A stretch of 64,000 nt of DNA, taken from assembly GCA_002269645.1 (NCBI GenBank), contig NIVC01003617.1, positions 23,301-87,300 of the forward strand. The letters are read 5' to 3'. The translations under genes and the position numbers were made by a program. This stretch comes from Macrostomum lignano (taxonomy: Eukaryota). Under the pieces are notes generated by a model. That model worked only from the letters and a program-made list of their open reading frames with translations, was not told the origin of the DNA and ran no database searches. Below are positions 40,021-64,000 of the stretch, in pieces; the first letter of the stretch is position 1; each line of letters starts with the position of its first letter.

Positions 40021-40627
40021 ATTCACGCATACATACAGAGAGCTATTGTGAAGATAGACAAAGAGCGCACGTATTATTGAGATACAATTTTATATCAAAA
40101 TTATTCCGGAAAACGTTGACACAAGAAACTATCTCTTTCCTGTGTGCAGTGTTCTTACTGTCTTTTTTGAATTTGAAATCGTTTTTTCCTTGCTTAAAAT
40201 CTGTAAACTAGTATCTAAACACGGAAAATCTAATGAGCCAGGGCCAGCAACGAGGCAGATCATCAGTAAAAAGTATAATACTGGGGTAGAGTTGCTCTCT
40301 TAGTAAATAGAATGACAAAGAGAACGACAATGCAAGCATTAGTTTTAATAGCCAACGCGTTTTGTCAAAGCTGTGGTCAGGATTCTTGAGGCTACGTACA
40401 TTCGTTTGCACAAGCCATCGTTGAATGTGCAGCTGGCTGGCATGGCAGGGGCATATTATATTCATTTTAAAAGTTCACAAATAGGTCTTATACTAGCAAT
40501 CTTCGCCCCCCGATGGGGGACATCTGGATAGAATCTCTGTTTTCTACAAGTAACAAAAAGACAGCCAAAAATCCTTCAAAAAGACAACAGACAAACTGCT
40601 CAAATGAAGCGCAGTGCAAAAAGAAAT

Positions 40628-41855
40628 CATCCCAAGACTGCAAGCATCCCCCAGATAGCAAGCATCCCCTAGATAGCAAGCATCCCCCAGATAGCAAGCA
40701 TCCCCCAGATAGCAAGCATCCCCAAGATAGCAAGCATCCCTCAGATAGCAAGCATCCCCCAGATAGCAAGCATCCCCCAGATAGCAAGCATCCCCCAGAC
40801 AGCAAGCATCCCCAGATAGCAAGCATCCCCTAGATAGCAAGCATCCCCAGATAGCAAGCATCCCCCAGATAGCAAGCATCCCCCAGATAGCAAGCATCCC
40901 CCAGATAGCAAGCATCCCCCAGATAGCAAGCATCCCCCAGATAGCAAGCATCCCCCAGATTGCAAGCATCCCCCAGATAGCAAGCATCCTCAGATAGCAA
41001 GCATCCCCCAGATAGCAAGCATCCCCCAGATAGCAAGCATCCCCCAGATAGCAAGCATCCCCCAGATAGCAAGCATCCCCCAGATAGCAAGCATCCCCCA
41101 GATAGCAAGCATCCCCCAGATAGCAAGCATCCTCAGATAGCAAGCATCCCCCAGATAGCAAGCATCCCCCAGATAGCAAGCATCCCCCAGATAGCAAGCA
41201 TCCCCCAGATAGCAAGCATCCCCCAGATAGCAAGCATCCCCCAGATAGCAAGCATCCCCCAGATTGCAAGCATCCCCCAGATAGCAAGCATCCCCAAGAT
41301 AGCAAGCATCCCCAGATAGCAAGCATCCCCCAGATAGCAAGCATCCCCCAGATAGCAAGCATCCCCCAGATAGCAAGCATCCCCCAGATAGCAAGCATCC
41401 CCCAGATAGCAAGCATCCCCCAGATAGCAAGCATCCCCCAGATAGCAAGCATCCCCCAGATAGCAAGCATCCCCCAGATAGCAAGCATCCCCCAGATAGC
41501 AAGCATCCCCCAGATAGCAAGCATCCCCCAGATAGCAAGCATCCCCCAGATAGCAAGCATCCCCCAGATAGCAAGCATCCCCAAGATAGCAAGCATCCCC
41601 AGATTGCAAGCATCCCCCAGATAGCAAGCATCCCCCAGATAGCAAGCATCCCCCAGATAGCAAGCATCCCCCAGATAGCAAGCATCCCCCAGATAGCAAG
41701 CATCCCCAGATAGCAAGCATCCCCCAGACAGCAAGCATCCCCCAGATAGCAAGCATCCCCCAGATAGCAAGCATCCCCAGATAGCAAGCATCCCCCAGAT
41801 AGCAAGCATCCCCAAGATAGATAGCATCCCCAAATAGCAAGCATCCACCAGACAA
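40628..41855 (+). repeat. 18-bp tandem repeat (AGATAGCAAGCATCCCCC), ~65 copies
   Basis: Direct inspection. Variation is mostly C4 versus C5 runs. One + frame reads (DSKHPP)n. Confidence 0.97.
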
Positions 41856-47650: not shown

Positions 47651-50482
47651 TCAGTTCAGAACAAAGCGCTCTTTCAGCATGGCCTTCGGCTTGTGCCGCT
47701 TCTCATTGTAGGCCCGGTAGCGCTCCTCTTCGTTCAGCTGCCGCTGTCGTTTCACCTCATTTTCCATACGGCGAACCCGCGTCTGCCTCTTGATGGCGTC
47801 TAGCGGCACCCGGGTGTAGCGCAAGCTGAACGACACGTCCTCTTCCAGCACCGGCACGTTTGCCACCGGCGACGGGAACCGGTAGGTGCACCGATTGGCG
47901 CTCGAGTCCAACGCTTTTTTGGCCGCTTCGGAGTCCATCGCTTTCACCAGCTTCTTGTTCTTCTCCGGGTAATAATCCACGGGCAGGTAGCTGATGCCCC
48001 GGCTTGTAAGGTCCGTTTTGAACTGCTTCTCCACGGCGTACTTTTGCTTGCGGAGCTCGAACATGTCGCAGAGTCGATCAGGCGTGCTGTACAGCCATAT
48101 GAAGTTTTGCCGGAAAACAAGGTCTTCTGGCTTGTAGTAGAACTCCTTGGGTGTGCGCAGCGCCAGGAAGCTTAAGCCTTTGCGCGTGGCTTCGCACACC
48201 AGCGCCAGGCTCTCTACAAGCACACCTGGGATCACTTCACGAATTGTGCGGCTGTTCCAGTTAACGTTCTCCGTGATGATAGATGGGTTTACTTCCAGCA
48301 GCCAAGGCCTGCCACCTTCATCGATACAGATATCCAACGAGAAGACTTGGTAGCAGTTAGCCTTTTCCTTGATCTGGTCCAGTACGCTGCAACAAATGTT
48401 GGACACCATTGAGCGCATGGTGCGAAGGAATGCTTCATTTGTGCTAAAGTGCGTCCATGGGTCTTGACCTGGCGGCACGTCTGCAGGGTCAAAATCGGCA
48501 GCAGGTGCAGCCCCTGTGGCACCGGCAGTCCCAGCAGCACCACTCTCCGAGACAGTCGCACCCGCTGAACTAGTTCCAGGGGCCGCGGCAGCACCAGATG
48601 TAGAAGCAGGGCTGTTGGCTCCTACACTTGGTGATGCGGAACCACTTGGCTGCACAGTACTAGTCGAAGTCGCCTGAGCAGTAGCATCTAGATTTTGAGC
48701 AGTCTTGTCCATCTTTTGAGGTTTTGGGTTGAGCTCTGGCGCCTTAGTTGCCATCATGATGAGTGGTAGATTTTGCTTGTTGCCCTTCAGGCAGCCGTGA
48801 CGCACAGCAAAGTTGTACTCTTCGCACTCGTCATTGTCAAACTCGCCAGCATAAAAACCAACTCGATTAATTGGCTCCAATGGATCCAGTTCGACCGATG
48901 GCTTCCTGTTTTTCTTTTTCTTGGCGTTGTTCTGCGTCTGAAGCACGTCCTCAGAGGTGTTGTCACCCGATGTAGTCGTCGCATTGTTAGCACTGGCCGG
49001 TGGCTGGGTGGCTGGATCGATTTTGGGTCCGAAAGTGCGCCAAACTCGAGTACCTGCTAGGTGCTGTCGAGCTCTGAATTTCTCATTCTTCTGCATTTCC
49101 TTGTACGGATCGGGGACTTTTCTGACAAAGCCCGGATGCAGAAATCCCAGGACGCGCTTAAACCGAGTAACGATTATCAGCAGGAACATTCGAATATCAA
49201 ACTTCTGACCGGTGTTGGTGAGCATAGGATTTTTTATGTACCTCTGCACGACGAAATTTTGTCCCCACATAAATCGGTTGGAAGTCTTCACCTTAAGGAA
49301 GGTGCGAAGTTGCTCCGCAGAGGAAAGAATTCGAACGCCACGTCCGCTGCGCATGTACGACGGCTTCACAATCCAGTGGGCGTCGGGAGCTGTCCTGGAT
49401 ACATCTTCTATGAACACGTTCTGCTGAAGTGACGACGAAAACACCTTTGTCTCGGGCACAAAAATTTTGCTCACGAAACACGGGCACATGCTGCCGTCGT
49501 GCAGTTTGTCGATTCCGAGCTCGTTTCGTGCCTCCTTTGACATGGTTTCGAAGCAGCCAGGCTCTGTACAAGGCTCCATGTTGTGTCGAGCGTACTGGTG
49601 CGGACACAGCATCTGACACGGAATTCGTTTCCGGGTATGAGGACAGAGATGCTCCTTGAACTGTATACCCTTGTGCAGAGTGTTGCTTTGCAAGGTGAAA
49701 GCGAGGCTTTGCTTATCCTTTAAATAGATGTCCAACGGCAAACGGTTGACAAAATGGTGCTCCGGTCGCAGAGTGGGTAGCACCTCGGTGGCCTTGCGCT
49801 TGCCCAGCCAGCAGAAAACACGCTCACCCCCGTCCGTCGGCAGATTCTTGATCTTCTCCATTTTCATAAAGTCGCAGAAGGCGGTAAAAAGCAGATCAAG
49901 GCAGCCCACTCCGTTGTTTTCTGTCTCGATGAAAAACTTTGTATTGTTGCAAAGCAGCTGGGGATAGCTTTCCTGATACAGGCGATTGTACATAGCCAGA
50001 TGCTCGCCGAATCTGTACAGCTGTGTGCTGATAGAAAATGCTTTGCGTTCTTCAACCTTTGGCAACTCAGGCTCACCCTTGCCCTTCTTCTTTTTCTTCT
50101 TAGCGTTGCTCTTGTTTTCAATGTCATCGTTGGATGCATTTGTACTGTGCGAGGCCGGCAGCACCTCAGGAATAACTGCAGCTGTAGTTGCGGGCAGGCT
50201 CGTCTCAGCCACCACCACAGTCTCCGCAGCTTCTGGCGCCGTATTTGGCTCCACTACTCGTGGCACTTGCGAGTTGCTCTGGCTGTTTTGGTGAAAGGAG
50301 GACTCCGTGGACATTGGCTTAGCCTTCTTAAGCGACTGTTGGTCCATAGCGAACACATTCTTTATATCTTCTGTGGTAGCTGTCCCATCGCAATACTCGG
50401 AGTAGTTTGCTCGAAGCACTGCCGCATCGGCGCTGTTCGCTTTCTTTTTTAGAGGCATCTGCACGGGCGCGGCCTCTTGCAT
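47651..50482 (-). CDS. TTLL10: Tubulin-tyrosine-ligase-like (ATP-grasp) protein, TTLL10-like glycylase, intronless, 943 aa
   Basis: WIVKP..GRGV, VVQRYIKNP, KFDIR and SLDICIDEGGRPWLLEVN motifs. EVIPGVLVESLALVCE resembles the TTLL10 C-terminal helix. TTL family is certain; the subfamily call is less so. Confidence 0.8.
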   Translation of the reverse strand: MQEAAPVQMPLKKKANSADAAVLRANYSEYCDGTATTEDIKNVFAMDQQSLKKAKPMSTESSFHQNSQSNSQVPRVVEPNTAPEAAETVVVAETSLPATTAAVIPEVLPASHSTNASNDDIENKSNAKKKKKKGKGEPELPKVEERKAFSISTQLYRFGEHLAMYNRLYQESYPQLLCNNTKFFIETENNGVGCLDLLFTAFCDFMKMEKIKNLPTDGGERVFCWLGKRKATEVLPTLRPEHHFVNRLPLDIYLKDKQSLAFTLQSNTLHKGIQFKEHLCPHTRKRIPCQMLCPHQYARHNMEPCTEPGCFETMSKEARNELGIDKLHDGSMCPCFVSKIFVPETKVFSSSLQQNVFIEDVSRTAPDAHWIVKPSYMRSGRGVRILSSAEQLRTFLKVKTSNRFMWGQNFVVQRYIKNPMLTNTGQKFDIRMFLLIIVTRFKRVLGFLHPGFVRKVPDPYKEMQKNEKFRARQHLAGTRVWRTFGPKIDPATQPPASANNATTTSGDNTSEDVLQTQNNAKKKKNRKPSVELDPLEPINRVGFYAGEFDNDECEEYNFAVRHGCLKGNKQNLPLIMMATKAPELNPKPQKMDKTAQNLDATAQATSTSTVQPSGSASPSVGANSPASTSGAAAAPGTSSAGATVSESGAAGTAGATGAAPAADFDPADVPPGQDPWTHFSTNEAFLRTMRSMVSNICCSVLDQIKEKANCYQVFSLDICIDEGGRPWLLEVNPSIITENVNWNSRTIREVIPGVLVESLALVCEATRKGLSFLALRTPKEFYYKPEDLVFRQNFIWLYSTPDRLCDMFELRKQKYAVEKQFKTDLTSRGISYLPVDYYPEKNKKLVKAMDSEAAKKALDSSANRCTYRFPSPVANVPVLEEDVSFSLRYTRVPLDAIKRQTRVRRMENEVKRQRQLNEEERYRAYNEKRHKPKAMLKERFVLN

Positions 50483-51127
50483 CGTGTCGCGTTGTTTACA
50501 AAATTATTCCGACACGAAAAGCTGCTCAACTTTCTATTGTAAATTGCGGGGAGCTTAGGCTCTGCTTGGCTTAACTTGACTTCTGCAAGGTACAGAAATG
50601 CGTCTCACTATAGAGATGCTTAAACTTTCGGCCACAGACGACTAGGACTGAAAGTAGGCGTAGGCTCGGGTTCGATTATCGCTCAAAATAGTCTATGGCA
50701 TGGACTATTGTACGCAGTCGCTGCTATTTGAAGGATACATCCATCCACTAAACTAAAAATGAGTTGTTTTAGAATAACCAGATATGCAACTCGCCAATAT
50801 GCGCTCAACAACTTGTTTTGTGGTTGTGTAGTTTACATTTTTATTTGGTCATACGAGCGTATTAAAAAAGAAAAAACATTCTGATAACTTGAATTCAAAA
50901 AATAGGCATCGTATATATGCGATCGCGTATTCATGTAGATTACATCTAGATGCAAAATAGAACAAAATGAAATGAGTTCACATACTGTTCAAAAAATGTG
51001 CGTGATGCGTTTAAGATTTAATTTTAATGACCGACGCACAAAGCAAACTGTTTGTGCTACACTACCGTTCAAAAACTACTGTATAGGTGAAATTCCACGT
51101 CTCGGTGTAAAATCCAATCTGCAGGAG

Positions 51128-51706
51128 TCACAGGACCTCGCAGTGAAAAGCTGGTTTTATTGGCTTTTTTGGAACCAACACAGCACGAATAGCCTCGTCA
51201 AACACGCTCTTCAGCCCTTTCTGAGTCAGGGCTGAACACTCAAGGTACTTCGCAGCGTTAATCTCCTTGGCCATTGTCATACCCTGCAGGTGGGTGATGG
51301 GGGCCAGCTTCTTTGCTTTTAGCTCTTTAATTGTCTCCTTGTCGTCGCGCAGGTCCATTTTTGTGCCAACCAGCACGATTGGAGCGTTTGGACAGTGATG
51401 GCTCACCTCCGGGTACCACTTGGATCGAACGTTCTCAAAGCTTGTCGGACTGACGAGGGAAAAGCAGATGATAAACACGTCAGTCTCGGGGTAACTGAGC
51501 GGTCGGAGTCGGTCGTAGTCCTCCTGGCCGGCTGTGTCCCACAGGCCCAGGTTAATAGGCCGGTCATTGGCCACCACGACGGCTGAGTAGTGATCGAACA
51601 CTGTCGGCACATAGGTGCTGGGAAAGGCGTTCTCAACGTAAGAGATGAGCAGACAGGTCTTGCCAACTGTTCCGTCGCCAACAAAGACGCACTTTACCGA
51701 CTGCAT
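51128..51706 (-). CDS. RAC: Rac-like Rho-family GTPase, divergent paralog A (192 aa, CAAX CEVL)
   Basis: [39 protein letters not shown] and ECSAL motifs. True ATG at 51706. Probable 5'-UTR intron with donor at 51889. Confidence 0.95.
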
Positions 51707-51711
51707 TCTTA

Positions 51712-51754
51712 GGATACTGTGAGATACTGTGAGATACTGTGAGATACTGTGAGA
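51712..51754 (-). repeat. Four copies of a 10-bp unit containing CTCACAG (acceptor-like) just upstream of the Rac A ATG
   Basis: GAGATACTGT x4 on the + strand. Confidence 0.85.
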
Positions 51755-52775
51755 ATGAAATTTCCGAAATTCTGTTTCTCGCAAGCCGTGTCAGCGTCAC
51801 GCGTTTTATAATATTTTGGCTTTCGAAATCGCTTATTTTTAGACTATGCCTCACTCAAACGATAGAGAAATAACACAGTAAGCTCGTACCTTCTCTGCCC
51901 AGTCGCCCTCTCCTCTTCATGCCCTCTCTTATTTTTCATGCTTGCTACAAGCTATTAATAGTCAGCTACTGCGTAATTAGTAAGCATGCAAATTCTTTCC
52001 ATAGCATCCTTGGATATGGAAGTGACAGAAACATTGCCACCTACACGAATCTCAACTGCTGCACCGGAAAGCAAATAATTAGTTGAATTTGGGGTTCAAC
52101 TTTTTCTTAGATTCAATGTATCGATTCAATCTAGCAAATTGAAACTGAAAAACAACTTTACGGTTTCTTAATGGTACGAATTGATTAGAAACGCTGTGAC
52201 ACCCTGCCATGCATATTAAAATGTTTAGAAATACAGAAAAATCTGTCTATTCTCAAGCACATTCATTCGCTAAGGAGGGCAAGGCAAGCAGCATGCATCA
52301 ACCTTCCCTCTCGAAAGGGTGAAGCTGCATAAACTCTCCACTTGGCCAGCGCTCGCAACCTTCTACTCATTTCAGAGCCCGATGCGATGCCCAGAGCAAA
52401 AGAGACGATGCCTTTGATGCCATCATCGCCTTCTCTTCTCTGCTGGTATGACTGACTAGCACGCAGCCTGAAAAAAATTGCAGTGTGCACAGAGCGTGCT
52501 TTTGTGCGCGCGCCCCACCCCAACGCCCCCTTGCCTAGCAGTTATCCCGACCCGCAAGTTTTGTCTGTGCAGACTAGCAATAGTCAGATCTATTTTTGCC
52601 AAGTCTACACAGAAACTGGAACTCAGCTATCTATCTACTTGTTTCTTTCATTCCTTTTTGCATATCGAAGCCTATCTCAGACATAAAAGAAAATTCTTAC
52701 CAGGCGCAGAAATAGAATTTAGTTAGAAGATACGCTGTAAGCCAGCTCCTCTCTGTTTTAGACCTTCTGAGCGCG

Positions 52776-53363
52776 ATGCAGGCCATCAAGTGTGTTGTGG
52801 TTGGAGATGGAGCTGTTGGAAAAACCTGCCTCCTCATCTCCTACACGACCAACGCCTTTCCTAACGAGTACATCCCGACCGTGTTCGATAACTACTCGGC
52901 GAATATCATGGTGGACAGCAAGCCCATCAACCTGGGCCTGTGGGACACGGCTGGCCAGGAGGACTATGACCGGCTGAGGCCGCTGAGCTACCCGCAAACT
53001 GACGTGTTTCTGGTCTGCTTCTCCCTCATCAGCCCGGCCAGCTATGAGAACGTGCGGGCCAAGTGGTACCCGGAGGTGAGACACCACTGTCCCAGCGCTC
53101 CGGTCGTGCTGGTCGGCACCAAACTGGACCTGCGCGACGATCCAGAAACGATTGAAAAGCTAAAGGAAAAGAACCAGGCCCCCATCACCCACCTGCAAGG
53201 CATGTCGATGGCTAAGGAGATCGGTGCGGAGAAGTACCTGGAATGCTCAGCCCTGACTCAGAAGGGACTGAAGAACGTGTTCGACGAGTCAATTCGAGCC
53301 GTGCTGCGGCCTCCCAAGCCCACACAGAGAGGACGACTTGGTGGGAAATGCAAAATTTTGTAG
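52776..53363 (+). CDS. RAC1: Rac1-like GTPase, paralog B (195 aa, CAAX CKIL)
   Basis: Canonical [29 protein letters not shown] and all G-boxes. CDS intronless. Probable 5'-UTR intron 52446-52761. Confidence 0.97.
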
Positions 53364-54249
53364 TCAAAGCAGATTTTGGCTTTGACTTTACACACTGACT
53401 TTACACACCGAGTTGCACGAAATTATATTCAAGATCAGCGCAGTTTTCTATAAGTAATAATAAATACTGCTTCTAACCTCAGTTTGTTTATGCAAATTAA
53501 TTCGCGGATCTAAATCAATGCTTTCTAGACGATATTTTTAAGAAGAAGCAACATTAAAGGATGTTAGTTTCGGAGAACAAAGTTTTGCTCCCTTTCTCGC
53601 TTCCAAACAGAAGATTAATCTAAGATGAAAAATGTTTGATACTGCATGTTAATTTTCATATTTTATCCAGTCTTTGTTGTTTTAATCAAGTGGGCCCAAG
53701 CTGATCGAAAAAATTTTCTATTTTTGTTGGCTCAAACATACAGATATTTCAGCTGCGTACGGCTTTAATGCTGCCTTTTATCCTAGAAATAATATTCTAT
53801 ATGTTTATGCTGCATTATGCAAATTTATGGTCGACATTAAGAGGCCTAGCCTCTATTTCTATTCTCTAGAAGACCACAGAAATTGAAGCCAAAATATAGC
53901 GGTGTAGAATCTAACAATATGTACAGACTTTTTCTTCATCGTTTAAAAAACGACATTGTAAACAATGTTCAAAAATGCTATAAATTGATTTTATACTGTT
54001 CTAAAAAGTTATTTTATGGCTATTTTTACTCTTAATTTTTTAGTGCACCCGCTGTGTTTGTATAATATTTACTTAGTTTTCTGAAAAATATTGTTCAAAC
54101 AAATAAATTCAATTTTTATGGTGAATCATTTTAATCATCAAGGAATTTTCGACAATAAACAATATAAACTACCTACGTGTATAAATTCTTCGATCTTTTA
54201 AGTTTGTTTATCATCCTTAGACAACAATATTTGTCTTTAGACTTCTCTT

Positions 54250-54800
54250 GAGTTTCAAATTTCTGGGCCTGCAAACGTCGGGTAGAACCGAGTTCGTCCC
54301 GAGGTGAGTGATCGAGCCTGGCCCTGTTGGAAAACCGGGCAGTGGCAGATAAAGTGCTCAGCGTTTTCACTGTCTGAGCGACAAAAGGGGTATCGCTCCT
54401 CCGGTACCTGGCCCTGAGATGGCGAGGGTAGCAGCCATGCCCGGAGAGGGCTATGCTAACCGCTCCCTGCTCCCTGCTAAAAGATCCCTGCGGTTGAGCC
54501 GAAGAAGGGTCTATATGCATTAAGGGGAGGGGCAGGGGCGGCAGCATGGGATTGCCTGCAGTTCCGAGTGTCGTGCCATCTGGGGAGACGCTCGGAGTCA
54601 GCCCAGCGACTAACTCGGTCAGAGATTGGGGCACCTGGGCCCCGCCGGCGGAGCAAACCTTGGCCAGCAGGTCAGCGCACTTGTTGCCGAGGAAACCAGC
54701 GTGGCCCGGAATCCATTCGAGCTCCGCCCAGCTGGGTGTTGCAGTCCAGGATAGATTTGTAGCTGGCGGTGCTACGTACGGCAGAGAGCCCGAAGGGCTG
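54250..54800 (-). mobile_element. 5'-truncated LINE 3' fragment (RNase H end plus C-terminal region) between Rac B and Rac C
   Basis: ELEWIPGHAGFLGNKCADLLAK RNase H motif followed by LSGHG. GC-rich island in AT-rich intergenic DNA. Confidence 0.85.
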
Positions 54801-55524
54801 CCTGGCTGTCGGAGTGAACAGACACTCAGAAAAGACTTCGGTTCAGGCACATGCTTGCTACTGAAACATTAAGTATATGACGTCTTAGTCGAACAAGGAC
54901 CAGTGCATGCATACAATTATGCTTCAACAAGATTAACCAATGACAAAAATAGGAAATTAGACAACTTTTGGCCTTTAACTTGGATAATTGTGCCGTACAA
55001 GCTCCAATTTTAGTTAGCAATAGAAAAAATAGCGCAAAAACAGAACGATAATTAAATTTCAGTTATATCGCGCGTGTGCATCAGTGCTGCGTGCTTTGAT
55101 TTGCAAAGTAAGAGATTCATGCATCTTCCGTATCATGGATATGCTTAAACTTAAATGAATACCACGAAGGCCAGAATAGAACTAGGCTGTCTCCGAAAAT
55201 ATCTGTCAACGAGCAGCAGCTCGATCCACAACCGCTGCACACCAAGACTAGAGCAGCTATCTTAAACGTTGACGATTAATTCATAATTCTAAAGGCTTAA
55301 AAAGGCATAGCCATATAGCGAACTGCTTATAAACTACTGGCAGTGAAATTTGGCGCGTGCGAGGCACCAAGAAAGCCAGCCAGGCTTATCTAAACACATA
55401 AATAAGGAATCACTGTATCTTCCGTCGTGCATGAATTTCAGGGGTAGGCAATTTCACAGAAAGTCATAAGCAGCCATTTCAGCGTAGTTCAGCTCAGCTT
55501 ACCTACTGAAAGATTTGACTGAAC

Positions 55525-56106
55525 ATGCAAACGATCAAGTGCGTTGTGGTTGGCGATGGAGCAGTCGGAAAAACATGTCTGCTCATCTCCTATACTACCA
55601 ACGCGTTTCCTAACGAGTACATCCCGACCGTGTTCGACAATTACTCCGCCAATGTGATGGTGGACGGCAAGCCCATCAACCTGGGCCTGTGGGACACGGC
55701 TGGCCAGGAGGACTATGACCGGCTGAGGCCGCTGAGCTACCCTCAAACCAACGTGTTCCTTGTCTGCTTCTCCCTCATCAGCCCAACTAGTTACGAAAAT
55801 GTTCGATCGAAGTGGTACCCGGAGGTAAGTCACCACTGTCCCAACACTCCGATCGTGCTGGTCGGCACCAAACTGGACCTGCGAGACGATCCAGAAACTG
55901 TTGAAAAGTTGAAGGCCAGGTATCTGGCCCCCATCACGCACCTGCAAGGAATGACAATGGCAAAGGAAATCAACGCAGTGAAGTACCTGGAGTGCTCAGC
56001 TCTGACTCAGAAGGGGCTGAAGACTGTGTTCGATGAAGCTATACAAGCTGTAATGTGCCCGAAGCCGAAGAGCAGCAAGAAGGGACTCAGCTGCAAACTG
56101 CTTTAG
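55525..56106 (+). CDS. RAC1: Rac1-like GTPase, paralog C (193 aa, CAAX CKLL)
   Basis: All G-boxes intact. CDS intronless. Probable 5'-UTR intron with donor AAA|GTAAGA at 55108. Confidence 0.97.
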
Positions 56107-57583: not shown

Positions 57584-59316
57584 GAAAATAAATGGAAAGT
57601 AAAATAGAAAAAAATAGGTAGCTACGTATGCAGCCGAGGCTTGCGTACATTTTGTGCAGTGCTGACCTCGGGGAATGCTGAGCACAGTCGAGTGATCTGC
57701 AGTTCAGCCTAAAATCCTTAACTCGTTCACAGCGGCAGAGGGATGACGCAACACACTAATCCACCGTTATTAAAGTACTCGTGCTTTTAAACCGCATCCC
57801 ACACGATTGATATTTTGCGCTTTAAGATTTTTTAATAACCCCTAAAGCAGCAAATCCTACTTGCAGGATTTTTGATAAACAGCACAAATGCGCTCGTGTT
57901 TTGGCGGTAGCATAGTCAAAGACTACTTAATAAGCGACAATTAATCGTCCTTGACCATAGCATTCTCAACAGGGGCTTTTATAGCGACAAGATCGCTGGT
58001 CGAATGAGCGCACAAGGACCACTGTACGTAGTACAATATAACAGGTTAAACAAAAAAATCGTGTAAATTTTTTGGAGGAAGGTCAATTTCCAGGAAAAAT
58101 ACACTGCGGAGAGAGCAAAATCATTTTTTCATCACATAATCACTGATTGCATTTGATTTGATGCAATGAAGATTACCATTCATTTAGTTAAGCATTCACA
58201 ACATGTTACTCTGTTGTACTTTTATAGTTGTGCAGTGAAAGGTTCATTTTCATATTGTTTTATTTTTACTTTATAAGCTGAAGTCAAAGTTGTGTAAATA
58301 CTCAGAAGTGAGGTTTTTATTTTGTTACTCTGAGTAAAATAATATTTGGTAATTAATTTTTTTGCATCCAGGTGTTCTTCTCAGTCATTTAGTTTCATTG
58401 AGATGAAAATATTAGTAGCTATCATTTTTAGTAGGAGTATAATAGGATTAGTAGCATTACTCAAGAAACATATTGTGTATTTATCGTATCCAATATACTC
58501 AGCAACATCGAAAAGTCGCCAATCGCTATCACAGAAGATTCCGTCTGTGGTCGCCACTTTTGAGTTAAAGTCTCTCAATCTTTGCGAGTGACGCAACTCA
58601 TCTACGCCGCGGCTGACTTCAGTTGAGGCATGAAGTGGGGGAGCGGTGTGCGAGGGTTGGACGGATTAAAGCTACCCCGATCAGTTTTCTCGTATCTTTT
58701 ATTTCAGAATAGTCCAAGAGAAATTGCTCGTGTAGCGACTTTTCAATGTTGCTGAGTAAATGTACTGATTGACAGAGACAAGTGAATCCTCGCACCGTAA
58801 AGCAACCAGTTTTCAACAAAAGAAGTATAAATCGTGTATCGATTTGAATTGAGAATATAGCAATAATGGGCTAAACATATGCACACGCAAAACATTTCAA
58901 GAAAAATTCTCAAGATTACAAGGAAGGACATTAGGGACATTAGGGATCGCAAGTTATTATTCGCAGCACATGACCACCTATTATTAGACTTGCTTCCTGT
59001 AGTGCACGCCTCCTCTATGCCTTTACGCTTTCCTCTGACTCTAGAGCTATAGCTTTCTCGACCAACGTGCACTAGCACTGGCCCCTCCAACTACTCGTAT
59101 TGCGTAACACTGTAGCTGCACATCGGCAGTGAATCTTTATAACAACTCAAATATACGGTCCACAAGACCATGTTATTTCTTAGCGCACAAGCGCCCTTCA
59201 CTTCTTTTCATACGTTAAAGTTATATACGAAGTAGTTAAAATATTTACCATTAATAAAACGAACTTCAAATCTCTAAATTTAACGACTTAACAGTTGAAT
59301 GCTCAATGAGTTTATT

Positions 59317-60088
59317 TCAAGGTTGGCTCAATGCTCTCGAAGGATCCAAGTAGCACTTCTTCGTGAGTCTGGACACTGTTTCCGAGACTGTGCTGAACCG
59401 TCGGTGCCCATGCTGTACCGGAGTGTTCTTCAAACGGTAGGCAACACTGGTCATCATGCTTAGGATATCGTTGCACTGGTACTCATCTGAAATAACTTTA
59501 CTAAGAGCCTGGACGTAAAGCGAGCCCTTGCTCTCATCCCGAAAAGTGACGTTTCCTTCCGTATTAGCAAAGCACATTAGAGTATCGGCGTCACAAGCGC
59601 GAGCGGGCACGCTCGATGACTGCGGCGCATCAACTGCTAAGCCTCTGCTCGAACACGAATTTTCCTCGATATGCTGGAAAGAAGAATAATTTGGGCTTGT
59701 CTCGCAGAGCCTCGCACTCGTTGGCCCGAATCGTGTCGTGATTGAAGAGATTTCCACTGGCACGCCTTCTCGATCATAGATCCAGCCGTTACTTCCGTGA
59801 CCCATCACAAATAAAATAAAGCAGCCAATCTTACTCAGCTCATCCCTCCGGGTGAGCTCGTCGTTGATAAACTCGAAGATTTCATGGCTCTTTGGGTTAA
59901 ATTTCTTCACGTCAAAATTAAGTCTGGTAAACAAAGTTGACAAAATTTCAACATCTATCTCGGATCCGACTCGATCGGAAAATTCAGACTCGCAGTTGTA
60001 CTTGTGCACATTGATCAAGAGAAAGCGGCGCGTTGGCTGAGTCACTGGGTAGGCTTCATCCCCTGCTCCAGGATCGAGCATGTGTAAT
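59317..60088 (-). CDS. Caspase-like protein (p20+p10). The catalytic-Cys motif is out of frame and reads PAYRG, so this is a pseudo-caspase, a pseudogene or an assembly indel artefact
   Basis: R.GS..DVE.L..LF..L.F, FILFVMGHG, DTLMCFANTEG..FRDESKGSLYVQAL and SRLTKKCYL. An alternative frame at ~59725-59663 gives ECEALRDKPKLFFFPAYRG. Acceptor TTTTTTTAG at 60089 suggests further upstream exons. Confidence 0.85.
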
Positions 60089-61076
60089 CTAAAAAAATTG
60101 TTTTATTTTTGTAAAACATGGCTTAAGTTGCAGAACCATGTACGAGCTCGTATTTTTTATATTCAATATCAAATACTTGTAATGCATAAGCTGGGTGCCA
60201 AAAATATAGGCTAACATATTTTGTAGCTCGATAAAACATTAATTCCCGTAAGGGCAACTCCAAAAAGCTCTTTCTCAGCTGTTTGAGAGCCTCGCTTCTC
60301 TCGTAAGCATAATAGACGTCATGATACTTTCCAGCGCGTTGTGCGACTCCTCTGGCGACACCGTGGACAGCTCCAGATATTCCAGCTCCAGTATTCCCTG
60401 CGGCAAGTCCGCAGGCTCCGGAGGCAGTCCTCCTGCTTCCCTCAAGGGCCCAGTGTAGTACCGTGCTGATGGTCCTTTGGTTCGGCCTCTGGTTTTTCCA
60501 AGCCGGGCTCTTAGCCGGGAAGTTTCTAGGTTGCTAGCGGTAGGGCCGGTAAGGGCTTAAGCCACCCCCGGTCGCTACCTCTTGGCCTGGCTGGTGGGTT
60601 TTGGGTTACGGCCCAGCAGCTTCTCACCTATAGTCCCCATTCGCCTTTCAGCGACTCATGGAGTATTCTTTTTCCTCCGACACGTCCGAGGTTGCTGGAG
60701 CACCAACCGAGGTTGGTACCGCGGCCCAGCCGAACATTCGCAACACTGGAACCCCCAGTGCCTCCCAGTCAGCCCCTGCCGCCGCTCAGGACAATACCGA
60801 AGCGGCTGGACAACAGGACAGCGGACCTCAGCCCTCTAAGAAGAAGGCCCGTAGCATTGCTCGCTACAAAGCTTTTCTCCAGCGCAAAGTGGAGGAACGG
60901 AGGAGTGCGAAAGCCGCCCCTCCGGTCGCCCCGAGGAGGGTGCCGGTAACTCTGCGAATCCCGCGGAGGAGCCGACATCCGACAAGGGGGCGGACCCCGC
61001 GCGCCGGTCAGAAGCGTCAGGTGCCGCCGAAGCTCCTGGTGCGGCTGGCCCCTCCCGTGGCGGGACCTCTGCCCGT

Positions 61077-61925
61077 GTGGAAACTCCCACGGCTGCGGAG
61101 GGATCCAAAGCGAGGGGCGCTGGCCAAACCACTAAGCCGAAGCGCACCCATGCGGCTATGGCCAAGAGGCAGCCGGCCCTGATCATTCAAGGCCAGGAGA
61201 CGCCTCTTACGGCCGAACAGCTCGACCAAATCTGGCGCAGGCTGGACTCCCACCTGGTCAAGATGGCCTTGAGCGGTACCGCTATTCAAGTCCAAAAGAC
61301 GAAAGTCAAGGACCAAGCCCTTCATATCCAGCCCGCCGACGGCCAGTCTGGGCAGCAGCTCCTCGAGATGTTGAAAGCCTTCGACTGGGGTACGGAGCTG
61401 GAAAACCTGTTTATCTACAGGGAGGACGAGCGACCCCGGACACACCGGCACCGTGCCTGGATTCCGGCTCGCAGTTCCATCACCAAGGCCGACGAGCTGC
61501 GTCGCCTGCTAGTGGCTACCAACCCGGAGCTGCCGGCTAATGGCGTCGTAGTTCACGAGACCATCTCCAAGCCGGGCGGAGACGGTTTCACGGCTATTCT
61601 CGGACTGTCGGATAGCTGGATGCTCCGCTACCCGGACATGTCCCTTATCCCTGTCGGGCTGATGGGGCTGATGCAGATTCAGCTTTTTAGCTTTGAGTCT
61701 GACGCCACCCGTCCACCGCCCCTGGAGAAGCGTAAGCGGGCGAGCGGGGGCTCTGCCGGGCGGAAACGCCCAGGAAAAGAAGCTCCCGTTCGTCACGACC
61801 CCTCCGAGGACGTGGACCCCGTCAGGGGGAAAGCCGCGAAAGCTGCAGCAACATGCGGACGTGGAAAGGGCCGGAAACCCGCCCGGAACACTATCCGCTC
61901 TGGTCTGACTCAGCGCGCGAAGTAG
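61077..61925 (+). CDS. LINE ORF1 (gag-like; DUF4780-like core)
   Basis: RAWIP...LLVATNPEL...GFTAILGL pattern upstream of the endonuclease. The N-terminal part is probably in frameshifted ORFs 60658-61182. Confidence 0.65.
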   Translation: METPTAAEGSKARGAGQTTKPKRTHAAMAKRQPALIIQGQETPLTAEQLDQIWRRLDSHLVKMALSGTAIQVQKTKVKDQALHIQPADGQSGQQLLEMLKAFDWGTELENLFIYREDERPRTHRHRAWIPARSSITKADELRRLLVATNPELPANGVVVHETISKPGGDGFTAILGLSDSWMLRYPDMSLIPVGLMGLMQIQLFSFESDATRPPPLEKRKRASGGSAGRKRPGKEAPVRHDPSEDVDPVRGKAAKAAATCGRGKGRKPARNTIRSGLTQRAK

Positions 61926-62179
61926 CTGCTGGACACCGCCAAGGCCAACAACCGCAGCAACCCCCAGCCCAGTGTCACCACTGCGCCCCCCTGGAAAACC
62001 GGGCCAAGAGTGAGAATGCCGCCCTTGTGGTGGCCCGCCCTCGACCATGGAGACCATCCGGGAGGAGCCCATGGAACTGGAGCCTGGAGCCATCGGCGAG
62101 GCAGAAGAGGCGGCTCTCCTGCACAACTCGCCCTGAACCGGCAGGAAGCTGCGCGGACCACTCGTGGAATCCCCGGAGT

Positions 62180-64000
62180 GGACATCCTGCAGCTTAACTT
62201 GCACCACTGCATCGCGGCCTCTACCAACCTGATGCAGGTGGCAAACTTCGTGAAACCGGGCATCATCCTCTCCAGGAGCCCTGGACGAAGAAAGGTAAGA
62301 TTCCGAATATTCCTGCTGGTTTTGACTGTTTTCAGGACCCTCAAAACCCCAGAGCAGCCATTTTCGTATCTACCCACCTCAAAACTTGGCACAGATGGGA
62401 CCTCTCTGACTGAGACCTCTGTGTCATTCAATCCAACCACATAATCACCAATCGCACAGTCATCATCGCCTCGATTTATATCCCTGGCGATGGCCCCGCG
62501 GTTCCACCCAGCCTCACCTCTCTCGTGGACTACTGCTCTGACCGCAGGTTCGAGCTGTTGGTGGCGGGCGACGCCAACGCCCACCACACCCACTGGGGCA
62601 GTAATACCTCCAACAGCAGAGCGAGGAACTCCTTGCTTACATCTGCACCACCAATACTGAGTTTTGCAACATTGGTGGAACTCCCACTTTCGACAACGGA
62701 CGATGGACGGAGGCCCTCGACGTGACCCTCGTCTCCCACGGCCTGGCTCCTCTGGTCAAGGACTGGGAGGTGTGGGACGAAGAGGAGTCTCTGTCTGACC
62801 ATCGCTTCGTTCGCTTTCGATTGCAATCCTCTTGCCCCAAACCTAACATCCTGTGGAAAAGGAACGTCTGGAACACTGACTGGACGGCTTTCGCGGAAAC
62901 CCTGAAATGCCAGACAGATCAGCTGACTACCGCCGCTCCAACCACCTGTCAGGAAGTGGATGACCTCGCTGACTTGCTCAGCAAAACCGTCCTGACAGCT
63001 CATGAGGCTTCCTGTCCTCTTAAAGCCTACAAAGGCAAGAAATCCGCCCTTTGGTGGCACCCGGCGCTTGGATCCCTCCGGCGCAAGGCAAAGTGCCTCC
63101 AACGGAAAGCTCGCAAGAGCAAGGACCCAGCCGACCTGGCCGCCTATCAAGACGCGATTCGCGACTTTAAGCGTGAAACCAGGAAAGCCAAGTCCGACAA
63201 GTGGTGCCAATACTGCGCGGAGTTAGAAGGCACCCGCCCTACTTCACGCGTGGTTAAGGCTCTCACCCTCGACAAAATGTCAAAGCTCTTAGTCATTAAA
63301 AGACTGGATGGCCGGCTCGCTGAGAACCCTGGGAATCGCTGGACATTATGCTCTCCAGCTCTTTCCACGTGCCGCACCGACGCTAGGCTCATCGACCACT
63401 CTCCGGGTGGACAAATCCTGGCTTCGACCATCATTACTAGAGAGAGGACGGCTCGGCGCCGTAAAATCCTTCTCTCCTTTCAAGTCACCGGGACCTGACA
63501 AAATTTATCCTGCCTTCCTCCATGAGGCAGTTAAAAATGACAGATTTCTTGGTCTCCTCTGCAACCTCTTCAAGGCCAGCATTACCTCGGGTACGTGCCA
63601 AAAGCCTGGCAAGAGGCCACGGTGGTCTTCATACCCAAACCAGGGAAGGGAGACTATCACTCTGCCAAAGCTTACCGCCCCATCAGTCTGACATCTTTCT
63701 TCCTCAAACTGATGGAACGGCTGGTACTCTGGCGCCTCCTCCTCGTAGAGCTGAGGAACTCCCCGCTCTCCCCTAATCAGCACGCCCCTTTTTGTCCTGG
63801 ACGTTCCATCGAAAGTGCGCTGCACGCCATTGTCGACAAGCTGGAGCGCGCCGTGCTTGGCAGGGGATACGCGCTCTCGCTTTTCCTCGACATTGATGGT
63901 GCTTTCAAAAATGTGCTCTTTGGAGCTTTTAGGCGGGCCCTGGAATCCCGGGGCACGCACGAGCACCTTATCCGCTGGATCATGTAAATGGTCTCCCATC
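62180..64000 (+). pseudogene. LINE ORF2 (endonuclease-RT), broken into several frames
   Basis: Consecutive motifs are distributed over ORFs 62010-62444, 62525-62725, 62722-63498, 63308-63691 and 63595-63987. Confidence 0.85.

What the first reader, a model, noticed from the sequence alone, without database searches (positions are those of the whole stretch)
59655..59730. Caspase catalytic motif hidden in another frame and reading Tyr instead of Cys
Seen: the 254-aa ORF lacks QACRG, but a shifted frame gives ECEALRDKPKLFFFPAYRG (TAT at 59671-59669). It is reachable by one extra base at the G3 run (59725-27) and one fewer in the A4 run (~59660-63). The His motif MGHG is intact. Established: c-FLIP-L is an inactive caspase homologue with Tyr at the catalytic Cys. 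Inference: either a FLIP-like pseudo-caspase obscured by compensating indel errors, or real compensating frameshifts that swapped ~20 active-site residues while keeping the ORF open.
Basis: partly seen in the sequence, partly recalled or inferred. Interest (0 to 1): 0.7.

Follow-up and report, generated by a model that had tools for sequence, protein, structure and literature searches.

The report
Dead caspase copy in a flatworm
This is an unannotated caspase-like reading frame in the flatworm Macrostomum lignano whose active-site stretch is knocked out of frame by two genuine one-base changes and has also lost its catalytic cysteine, so it is most likely a recently dead gene copy, not a new kind of regulator.

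Summary
The 254-aa ORF at 59317-60081 (- strand) is a caspase domain. Its 22 codons for the central strand and QACRG loop are read out of frame. The other frame reads ANECEALRDKPKLFFFPAYRG, with TAT at 59671-59669. Restoring that frame raises the Pfam caspase score from 89 to 118 bits.

The window is from Macrostomum lignano assembly Mlig_3_7, which was polished with Illumina reads. A second contig carrying the same locus differs at 0.6% overall but is identical across the ORF and both shift sites. Indel errors are therefore unlikely, and the compensating frameshifts are probably real.

In either frame the catalytic Cys is missing: Tyr in the old frame, and Gln is also changed to Pro. No active caspase can be made.

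The transcript-based GenBank annotation has no gene here, although all neighbours are annotated. Transposons sit immediately upstream. A clearly rotted caspase copy lies in the same gene cluster. AlphaFold confidence for the central strand falls from about 90 to below 50 in the present frame.

Best reading: a young pseudogene or orphaned terminal exon of an old caspase paralogue. An expressed non-catalytic decoy remains possible. It is not a FLIP family member, because it has no death effector domains. Interest is low to moderate.

The parts
59317..60081 (-). 254-aa caspase-domain ORF (ATG at 60081, TGA at 59319-59317). It has no pro-domain. It corresponds to the single terminal caspase exon of its multi-domain paralogues.
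   Evidence: Pfam PF00656, 89.1 bits; PDB caspases; best relatives 37% identical, all M. lignano; AlphaFold model; Foldseek TM 0.76-0.87 to caspases.
59660..59727 (-). Segment translated out of its ancestral frame. The ancestral frame (codons 59725 to 59663) reads ANECEALRDKPKLFFFPAYRG, which is strand beta-4 plus the active-site loop. The present frame reads PTSARLCETSPNYSSFQHIEEN.
   Evidence: three-frame translation; +29 and +43 bits when restored; the peptide alone finds only caspase active sites; pLDDT 50/45 as is, 94/87 restored.
59725..59727 (-). G3 run: the site (within about 2 nt) of the 1-nt deletion that starts the shift.
   Evidence: The spacing RF-xx-NEC is conserved with paralogue PAA49772.1/PAA63380.1 only if one base is added here.
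59648..59665 (-). Interval that must contain the compensating 1-nt insertion. The A4 run at 59663-59660 is one candidate.
   Evidence: The ancestral frame is still readable through RG (59668-59663). The present frame matches paralogues again from S-RGLAVD (59646 onwards; compare P0006 HRGLAVDQ).
59669..59671 (-). TAT (Tyr) at the position of the catalytic Cys codon in the ancestral frame.
   Evidence: Cys is nearly invariant among the ~220 homologous caspase domains aligned, and none of them has Tyr.
59675..59677 (-). CCA (Pro) at the position of the Gln of QACRG in the ancestral frame.
   Evidence: Q136 is more than 90% conserved in the alignment.
59797..59799 (-). CAC, the retained catalytic His (His95, motif MGHG).
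   Evidence: H95 and G96 are invariant columns.
59311..59316 (-). AATAAA hexamer immediately after the stop codon; a possible poly(A) signal.
   Evidence: sequence only; use not shown.
60088..60097 (-). TTTTTTTAG|A, a splice-acceptor-like site 7 nt upstream of the ATG. It is phase 2, with the same phase and first base as the acceptor of the caspase exon of PAA49772.1. It could be a cis- or trans-splice acceptor.
   Evidence: sequence comparison only; use not shown.
60300..64000 (+). 5' part of a non-LTR retrotransposon, head-to-head with the ORF. It begins about 200-300 bp upstream of the ATG (the start is approximate, taken from the jump in G+C) and runs off the contig end.
   Evidence: G+C 0.41 to 0.59; RVT_1 and RNase H ORFs in the continuation on the sister contig, L004 20961-24233.

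Best explanation
The locus is an old, diverged caspase paralogue of the free-living flatworm Macrostomum lignano. It lies at the end of a cluster of Rac/Ras GTPase genes and Ras-Ras-caspase genes, and its active site has been destroyed in the genome itself.

A 1-nt deletion at or near 59725-59727 and a 1-nt insertion 60-80 nt downstream put the 22 codons for the buried central strand and the QACRG loop out of frame. They restore the frame for the small-subunit half. Within the old frame the Gln and the catalytic Cys codons have also changed, to Pro and Tyr. No reading of this DNA gives an active protease.

The copy is most likely no longer functional. It is either a young pseudogene or a terminal caspase exon orphaned from its upstream exons or promoter by transposon insertions. 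It is still open because too little time has passed for further lesions.

Shown: the hidden frame, its homology, the species, the identity of two assembled copies, the absence of a GenBank gene model, and the neighbouring transposons and dead caspase copy.

Inferred: that it is not expressed or not functional, and the order of the lesions.
For: (1) The frameshifts are real.
- Two contigs, NIVC01003617.1 (the window) and NIVC01003792.1, are 99.43% identical over 18.5 kb, with 26 mismatches and 28 gaps.
- They are identical over 58637-60563.
- The assembly was Pilon-polished with Illumina reads.

(2) The protein is catalytically dead in any frame: Tyr for Cys and Pro for Gln.

(3) The GenBank annotation is transcript-derived.
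- It annotates TTL, three Ras/Rac genes and the Ras-Ras-caspase gene on these contigs, but nothing at this ORF.
- On the sister contig the accession numbers run from the TTL gene (PAA49768) through the 195-aa Rac (PAA49770) to the caspase fusion (PAA49772), and no gene is called at this ORF.
- No protein more than 37% identical exists among 1.8 billion cluster representatives, and the exact product is not on record.

(4) The present frame replaces the central hydrophobic strand KPKLFFF with SPNYSSF. AlphaFold pLDDT for residues 121-140 falls from 94/87 (frame restored) to 50/45 (as is), while the rest stays near 90.

(5) Transposons lie directly upstream in both copies: a non-LTR retrotransposon and a P-element-like transposase ORF. 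All close paralogues carry the caspase domain as the C-terminal part of long multi-domain proteins, so a bare caspase ORF looks like an orphaned last exon.

(6) The cluster shows birth and death of caspase copies. A caspase remnant with stops, frameshifts and a deleted active-site segment lies a few kb further upstream.
Against: - The ORF is completely open for 254 codons.
- 19 of 21 (nearly) invariant family positions are kept. The two lost ones are exactly the Gln and Cys of the catalytic motif.
- The second indel restored 105 downstream codons that would otherwise be lost to a stop within about 10 codons.
- An AATAAA follows the stop and a good acceptor precedes the ATG.

This pattern is what one would expect if the scaffold, but not catalysis, had been under selection, at least until recently.

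Absence from the GenBank annotation is weak evidence, because transcripts overlapping repeat annotations and weakly expressed ones were filtered out. No reads, expression data or orthologues could be examined here.
Confidence: 0.55

Rival explanations
1. It is a functional pseudo-caspase. The ORF would be expressed either as a stand-alone trans-spliced gene or as an alternative last exon of the upstream Ras-Ras-caspase gene. It would act without catalysis, for example by pairing with active paralogues as a decoy or modulator. Known examples of that mode are FLIP(L), Aedes CASPS18 and C. elegans CSP-2/CSP-3. The compensating frameshift would have been retained by selection because it rescued the small-subunit half.
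For: - The 254-codon ORF is intact despite the lesions.
- Every strongly conserved structural position outside the catalytic motif is kept, including both P1-pocket arginines (R37, R181) and the GS-x-Y/F-x-Q motif.
- The flanks have high AlphaFold confidence and a caspase fold.
- An acceptor-like site in the same intron phase (2) as the paralogue's caspase exon would splice in frame to the donor of the upstream gene's penultimate exon.
- AATAAA follows the stop.
- Natural Cys-less caspase domains exist among relatives, e.g. M. lignano A0A1I8JID0 with QAGRG.
Against: - The segment now translated is polar and replaces the buried central strand. Known pseudo-caspases keep this strand.
- The model loses confidence exactly there.
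- There is no transcript-based gene model.
- About 11 kb of transposons separate it from the upstream gene.
- The two assembled copies are identical here, so they give no evidence of constraint.
Confidence: 0.3
2. Both one-base shifts are assembly artefacts of the PacBio consensus at short homopolymers. The true gene would be in frame and would encode a caspase-like protein with PAYRG, still non-catalytic.
For: - Both candidate sites are short homopolymers.
- The two locus copies differ by about 14 single-base indels, several in G/C runs (58636, 60564, 63330), which look like residual consensus errors in this assembly.
- A gene model from the earlier ML2 assembly (A0A1I8JFD3) also reads a perfect [12 protein letters not shown] out of frame.
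Against: - Two separately assembled contigs agree at both sites while differing elsewhere.
- The assembly was Illumina-polished.
- G3 and A4 runs are short.
- One site needs an under-call and the other an over-call.
- The rest of the ORF has no such error.
- Even if true, the Cys-to-Tyr substitution remains, so the gene would still not be an ordinary caspase.
Confidence: 0.08
3. Recoding: the ribosome shifts -1 near 59727 and +1 near 59660 (or the mRNA is edited), so that the ancestral frame is translated from the present DNA.
For: None beyond the existence of the two frames.
Against: - There is no canonical slippery heptamer at either site (established knowledge of -1 and +1 programmed frameshifting).
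- A pair of opposite programmed shifts in one mRNA has no precedent known to me.
- The product would still lack Cys.
Confidence: 0.01
4. The alternative-frame motif is a chance resemblance and the present frame is the original one.
For: None.
Against: - A gain of 29 bits against the independent Pfam model and 43 bits against the family profile.
- The peptide alone retrieves only caspase active sites from the PDB.
- Spacing with paralogues is conserved to the residue.
Confidence: 0

Closest known systems
Macrostomum lignano Ras-Ras-caspase fusion proteins PAA49772.1 (1015 aa) and PAA63380.1 (757 aa)
   Same: They are the closest sequence relatives: 37% identity to the ORF and 40% once the frame is restored. 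They belong to the same gene cluster and lie on the same strand, about 12 kb upstream on the sister contig. Their caspase domain is encoded by one terminal exon with a phase-2 acceptor. The residue spacing RF-xx-NEC-x-L-x-KPKLFF is the same, as is the C-terminal L(T/S)KKC(Y/F)LDP.
   Different: They have an intact QACRG, long N-terminal GTPase domains and GenBank gene models. The ORF here has no pro-domain, a frameshifted active site and no gene model.
c-FLIP(L) / CFLAR, the vertebrate pseudo-caspase
   Same: It has a caspase fold without the catalytic Cys. FLIP has Tyr360 at that position (PMC7586951), the same residue that the hidden frame shows here.
   Different: FLIP has two N-terminal death effector domains, Arg in place of His, and an intact in-frame beta-4 strand. 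It works through FADD and caspase-8. Here there are no DEDs, His is kept, the Tyr is not in the translated frame, and flatworms are reported to lack FADD (PMC11463336).
Aedes aegypti CASPS18 (decoy caspase) and C. elegans CSP-2/CSP-3
   Same: They are short caspase paralogues without catalytic residues that arose by duplication next to, or alongside, active paralogues and modulate them. CASPS18 is described as a decoy that enhances CASPS19 (PMC4840389). CSP-2/CSP-3 are cited from my own knowledge.
   Different: Those are expressed, in-frame proteins with demonstrated activity on a partner. Nothing of the kind is shown here.
Unprocessed pseudogenes with compensated frameshifts / protein segments renewed by paired frameshifts
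   Same: A -1/+1 pair a few dozen bases apart replaces a short peptide and leaves the ORF open. This is a known outcome in both young pseudogenes and some functional genes (general knowledge).
   Different: Here the replaced peptide is exactly the catalytic strand and loop of an enzyme, and point substitutions at the two catalytic-motif residues accompany it.
UniProt A0A1I8JFD3 (M. lignano, ML2 gene model, 231 aa)
   Same: It is another M. lignano caspase-like model whose active site is read out of frame. Its QAEDILHPGLPR is exactly the +2-frame reading of DNA encoding [13 protein letters not shown].
   Different: It is a different paralogue (31% identity). Its hidden motif still has Gln and Cys. 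It comes from an older assembly, and error versus real lesion is unresolved.

Membership tests
Caspase family (MEROPS C14A, Pfam PF00656), by fold and homology | Significant sequence match to the caspase domain over the large and small subunit regions | tested here: met
   Pfam 89.1 bits, E 4.6e-25, model positions 2-233 of 233. PDB caspase-8, -3 and -7 at E 1e-14 to 1e-11.
Caspase family (MEROPS C14A, Pfam PF00656), by fold and homology | Caspase/hemoglobinase fold | tested here: met
   AlphaFold model with mean pLDDT 80.5. Foldseek top 50 hits are all caspases, TM 0.72-0.87. This is a prediction, and residues 124-162 have low confidence.
Active caspase (enzyme) | Catalytic Cys in Q-A-C-x-G | tested here: not met
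   Absent from the ORF. In the ancestral frame the motif is P-A-Y-R-G.
Active caspase (enzyme) | Catalytic His in (S/A)-H-G | tested here: met
   G-H-G, with His95 aligned to the invariant column.
Active caspase (enzyme) | P1 Asp pocket: two Arg plus the Gln of QACRG | tested here: not met
   R37 and R181 are present. The Gln position is Pro in the ancestral frame and is not aligned in the present frame.
c-FLIP / CFLAR | Tandem N-terminal death effector domains | tested here: not met
   The ORF begins 10 residues before the caspase domain. Pfam finds only PF00656.
c-FLIP / CFLAR | Cys to Tyr and His to Arg in an otherwise in-frame pseudo-caspase domain | tested here: not met
   Tyr occurs only in the untranslated ancestral frame, and His is retained. 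FLIP residues are from PMC7586951.
c-FLIP / CFLAR | Heterodimerises with an initiator caspase at a FADD platform | not testable with these tools
   Needs binding assays. FADD is reported absent from flatworms (PMC11463336).
Pseudogene (non-functional gene copy) | Disabling lesions relative to functional relatives | tested here: met
   Two frameshifts over the active-site strand plus loss of Cys and Gln.
Pseudogene (non-functional gene copy) | No expression, or no selective constraint | tested here: inconclusive
   There is no transcript-derived gene model on either contig, but reads were not inspected. The two copies are identical, so no dN/dS can be computed. No orthologue closer than 37% is available.
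Pseudoenzyme (functional, non-catalytic homologue) | Expressed, folded and under purifying selection despite lost catalysis | not testable with these tools
   Only indirect hints: an open ORF and 19 of 21 conserved positions kept, against low model confidence for the replaced strand.

The most novel reading that the evidence does not exclude
The compensated frameshift is a retained evolutionary event. In this reading, a caspase paralogue that had already lost catalysis (Pro/Tyr in QACRG) had its active-site strand rewritten by a -1/+1 pair. It is still expressed, possibly as an alternative last exon of the neighbouring Ras-Ras-caspase gene, to give a dominant-negative or scaffolding isoform. 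Together with A0A1I8JFD3, this would point to recurrent frame-switching of the caspase active site in the expanded M. lignano caspase family.
Probability: 0.1. Interest if true: 0.6.

Novelty: new member of a known kind. Interest (0 to 1): 0.25.

Why it matters
As it stands, this adds one unannotated, inactivated caspase copy to the large and unusual caspase repertoire of a regeneration model flatworm. It also shows that the family evolves there by birth and death within a Rac/Ras-caspase gene cluster. That is useful for annotation and for counting truly active caspases in flatworms, but it is not surprising.

It would matter more if the ORF proved to be expressed. A caspase scaffold whose catalytic strand was rewritten by paired frameshifts and then kept would be a clean natural example of a pseudoenzyme made by frame-switching. 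It would also give a candidate regulator of the odd GTPase-caspase fusions next to it.

Tried and rejected
- The word-indexed homologue search with the ORF returned nothing at E<=0.001. The exhaustive representative search was needed.
- An exact look-up of the ORF product found no record.
- I looked for a third subgenome copy to date the frameshifts.
  - The TTL gene and the Rac genes exist in only two annotated copies.
  - The third copy of the upstream Ras-caspase gene (NIVC01001849.1, L005) is interrupted 364 bp after its stop by a young LTR retrotransposon. Collinearity resumes only 148 bp before the end of the DNA I could fetch. A third copy of the ORF could therefore not be reached.
- No paralogue of the ORF lies elsewhere in the window.
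- An intron that would skip or repair the shifted segment was rejected. The only GT...AG pair inside it (59717-59674) spans 44 nt and would leave the frame broken (read).
- Programmed frameshifting was rejected for lack of slippery sites.
- dN/dS was not possible. The two copies are identical over the ORF and the nearest paralogue is 37-40% identical.
- A mosquito origin, my first guess from the retrotransposon and the caspase, was wrong. The contig is from M. lignano.

Full report
**What is in the sequence**

On the - strand, 59317-60081 is an open reading frame of 254 codons. It matches the Pfam caspase domain end to end: PF00656, 89.1 bits, model positions 2-233 of 233. It also matches solved caspases-8, -3 and -7. 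In every alignment there is a hole where the active-site strand should be.

The three-frame translation shows that the second frame is open from 59773 to 59635. It reads ...IRANECEALRDKPKLFFFPAYRGKFVFEQRLSS*. The codon CCA lies at 59677-59675 and TAT at 59671-59669. GGG lies at 59727-59725 and AAAA at 59663-59660. The His motif MGHG (His95, 59799-59797) is in the main frame.

**Is it more than chance?**

I built a hypothetical protein that follows the main frame to Phe-Gly, the second frame through ...PAYRG, and then the main frame again.
- It scores 118.1 bits against Pfam, 29 bits more than the ORF.
- It scores 306.7 against 263.6 bits on a profile built from the 150 best homologues.
- The 40-residue second-frame peptide, searched alone against all PDB sequences, finds only caspases. 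It aligns to their active-site segment, for example caspase-7 [24 protein letters not shown].

The spacing to the closest relative is conserved to the residue if one base is added at or beside the G run: ours RF-G-A-NEC, relative RF-R-G-NEC. The return to the main frame must occur between the RG codons (to 59663) and S-RGLAVD (from about 59646), which again matches paralogues such as HRGLAVDQ. The A run is therefore a plausible site for the second shift, but not a proven one.

**Where the window comes from**

A neighbouring Rac gene product is on record on NCBI contig NIVC01003617.1 of assembly GCA_002269645.1. The window is the last 64 kb of that 87.3-kb contig. The assembly is Mlig_3_7 of the free-living flatworm Macrostomum lignano, line DV1. 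The best protein relatives carry that species name.

The genome is a recent polyploid in which most sequence is present in about three copies (PMC10733133). Mlig_3_7 was assembled from PacBio reads with Canu and polished with Pilon using Illumina genomic and RNA-seq reads. Its GenBank annotation is derived from assembled transcripts, with non-coding and repeat-overlapping transcripts removed (PMC5730564).

**Error or real?**

A second contig, NIVC01003792.1, carries the same locus. Over 18.5 kb it is 99.43% identical to the window, with 26 mismatches and 28 gaps. Listing the differences shows none between 58637 and 60563. Both contigs therefore have exactly the same ORF, the same GGG and the same AAAA.

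Several of the single-base gaps elsewhere sit in G or C runs and look like residual consensus errors. Such errors do exist in this assembly, but they differ between the two contigs, as random errors should. Two shifts of opposite sign in runs of only three and four bases, reproduced in two separately built and Illumina-polished consensus sequences, are unlikely to be artefacts. I put that rival at about 8%. Even then the Cys codon would read Tyr, because a substitution is not the typical error of this technology.

**Relatives and context**

No protein closer than 37% identity exists among 1.84 billion cluster representatives. The best hits are M. lignano proteins in which the caspase domain is the C-terminal part of a long protein:
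- Ras-Ras-caspase (PAA49772.1, 1015 aa; PAA63380.1, 757 aa);
- ankyrin-kinase-caspase;
- ankyrin-caspase.

These paralogues are only 33-58% identical to each other, and ours is 35-40% identical to them. This is therefore an old lineage, not a fresh duplicate.

PAA49772.1 is encoded on the sister contig, on the same strand, about 12 kb upstream of the ORF. Between the two lie a P-element-like transposase ORF and a non-LTR retrotransposon with reverse transcriptase and RNase H on the opposite strand. The 5' part of that retrotransposon is the G+C-rich block from about 60.3 kb to the end of the window.

The caspase domain of PAA49772.1 is one terminal exon preceded by CAACAATTCCAG|A. Our ORF is preceded by AACAATTTTTTTAG|A at 60097-60088, which has the same intron phase and the same first base. 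The ORF thus corresponds to such a terminal exon. It might have been used by cis-splicing, or by the trans-splicing that is common in this species. Neither use is shown.

Further upstream in the cluster there is a caspase remnant with stops, frameshifts and a deleted active-site segment. A third copy of the upstream gene (NIVC01001849.1) has a very young LTR retrotransposon just after its stop, with 803-bp LTRs that are 99.9% identical. I could not reach a third copy of our ORF behind it.

**What the protein could do**

Among about 220 aligned caspase domains the Cys is nearly invariant. There are a few natural exceptions, such as M. lignano QAGRG, and none with Tyr. Of 21 invariant or nearly invariant positions, the frame-restored sequence keeps 19 and lacks exactly the Gln and the Cys of QACRG.

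In the frame actually open today, the central buried strand KPKLFFF is replaced by SPNYSSF. AlphaFold models were made with the same 29 homologues for both versions.

| Version | Mean pLDDT | pLDDT, residues 121-130 / 131-140 |
|---|---|---|
| Frame restored | 87.1 | 94 / 87 |
| ORF as is | 80.5 | 50 / 45 |

The flanks stay near 90 in both and superpose on caspases with TM 0.76-0.87. These are predictions, but they agree with what is known of the fold. That strand lies in the middle of the sheet, and pseudo-caspases such as FLIP(L) keep it.

**Interpretation**

The product cannot be a protease. I consider it most likely (0.55) that the copy is dead or dying. Four lesions sit on the active site. 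There is no transcript-derived gene model, although every neighbour has one. Transposons lie directly upstream. The domain is bare where all relatives have long N-terminal parts. The same cluster holds a demonstrably rotted copy.

The main rival (0.3) is an expressed non-catalytic caspase-like protein. The evidence for it is:
- the ORF is fully open;
- the second indel rescued 105 codons that would otherwise end within about ten codons;
- the only conserved positions lost are catalytic ones;
- an acceptor-like site and an AATAAA are in place.

That pattern suggests the copy may have lived for a time as a catalytically dead but structurally constrained protein, with Pro and Tyr in frame, before the frameshifts occurred. 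I cannot establish this order of events without an outgroup.

Recoding by two opposite ribosomal frameshifts has no support. Chance resemblance is excluded.

**Comparison with known systems**

The FLIP analogy rests on one residue. FLIP(L) has Arg315 and Tyr360 in place of His and Cys, plus two death effector domains (PMC7586951). Here His is kept, there is no DED, the Tyr is not translated, and flatworms are reported to lack FADD (PMC11463336). It is not a FLIP.

If functional, it would work more like short decoy caspases such as Aedes CASPS18 (PMC4840389) or C. elegans CSP-2/3 (my own knowledge). As a genomic object, it is an unprocessed pseudogene or orphaned exon with a compensated frameshift, which is a known kind of thing.

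**Verdict**

- Observation: confirmed.
- Interpretation: partly supported. The frameshifts are probably real and the protein is not FLIP.
- Novelty: a new member of a known kind.
- Interest: about 0.25.

The decisive data are read-level DNA and RNA evidence over 59.3-60.1 kb, plus the state of the locus in the third subgenome and in sister species. Both exist publicly but were out of reach of these tools.

Noticed in passing
Protein P0015 (UniProt A0A1I8JFD3, M. lignano ML2 gene model); not in the window: Its peptide QAEDILHPGLPR is exactly the +2-frame reading of DNA encoding [13 protein letters not shown] (16 codon solutions, none in the other offset). This is a second M. lignano caspase model with its active site read out of frame, here with Gln and Cys intact in the hidden frame. 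Assembly error or real lesion is unresolved.
   Followed up: partly
L004 about 2150-2750 and L005 about 2000-2550 (sister contigs, upstream of the Ras-Ras genes): A clearly decayed caspase pseudogene. It has several stops and frame changes, MAHR in place of MAHG, and the whole active-site strand and linker deleted.
   Followed up: partly
L004 7526-14642 (NIVC01003792.1); L005 10001-14582 (NIVC01001849.1): A gene encoding two Ras/Roc-type GTPase domains fused to an intact caspase domain (PAA49772.1, 1015 aa; shorter model PAA63380.1). M. lignano also has many ankyrin-caspase and ankyrin-kinase-caspase proteins (Pfam). A 2024 survey states that ANK caspases are restricted to parasitic flatworms and reports only a kinase pro-domain for M. 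lignano (PMC11463336).
   Followed up: partly
window 47651-56106: A gene cluster next to the caspase ORF. It holds a 943-aa tubulin-tyrosine-ligase-like gene (47651-50482, -), a Ras-family gene (51128-51784, -) and two Rac1-like genes (52776-53363 and 55525-56106, +). The two Rac genes are 87% identical in DNA. All are single long ORFs.
   Followed up: partly
L005 14947-24435: A very young LTR retrotransposon (protease, RT, integrase; 803-bp LTRs 99.9% identical). It is inserted 364 bp after the Ras-caspase gene in one copy only. Collinearity with the sister contig resumes immediately after it.
   Followed up: yes
window 58636, 60564, 63330, 63364, 63584 and others, compared with L002: The two copies of the locus differ by about 14 single-base indels, several in G or C homopolymers. 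They look like residual consensus errors of the PacBio-based assembly, not polymorphism.
   Followed up: partly
window about 60300-64000 (+); L004 16343-17980: A non-LTR retrotransposon (ORF1-like, RT, RNase H) runs off the contig end. On the sister contig a 545-aa ORF with a TNP-like RNase H domain (P-element/THAP9-type transposase) lies beside it.
   Followed up: partly
window 16351-18852 (+), 36649-37428 (-), 40544-41848 (-): Other long ORFs in the window: an 833-aa ORF with no Pfam match, an RPEL-repeat ORF, and a hexapeptide-repeat / eIF2B-epsilon-like ORF. They were not examined further.
   Followed up: no
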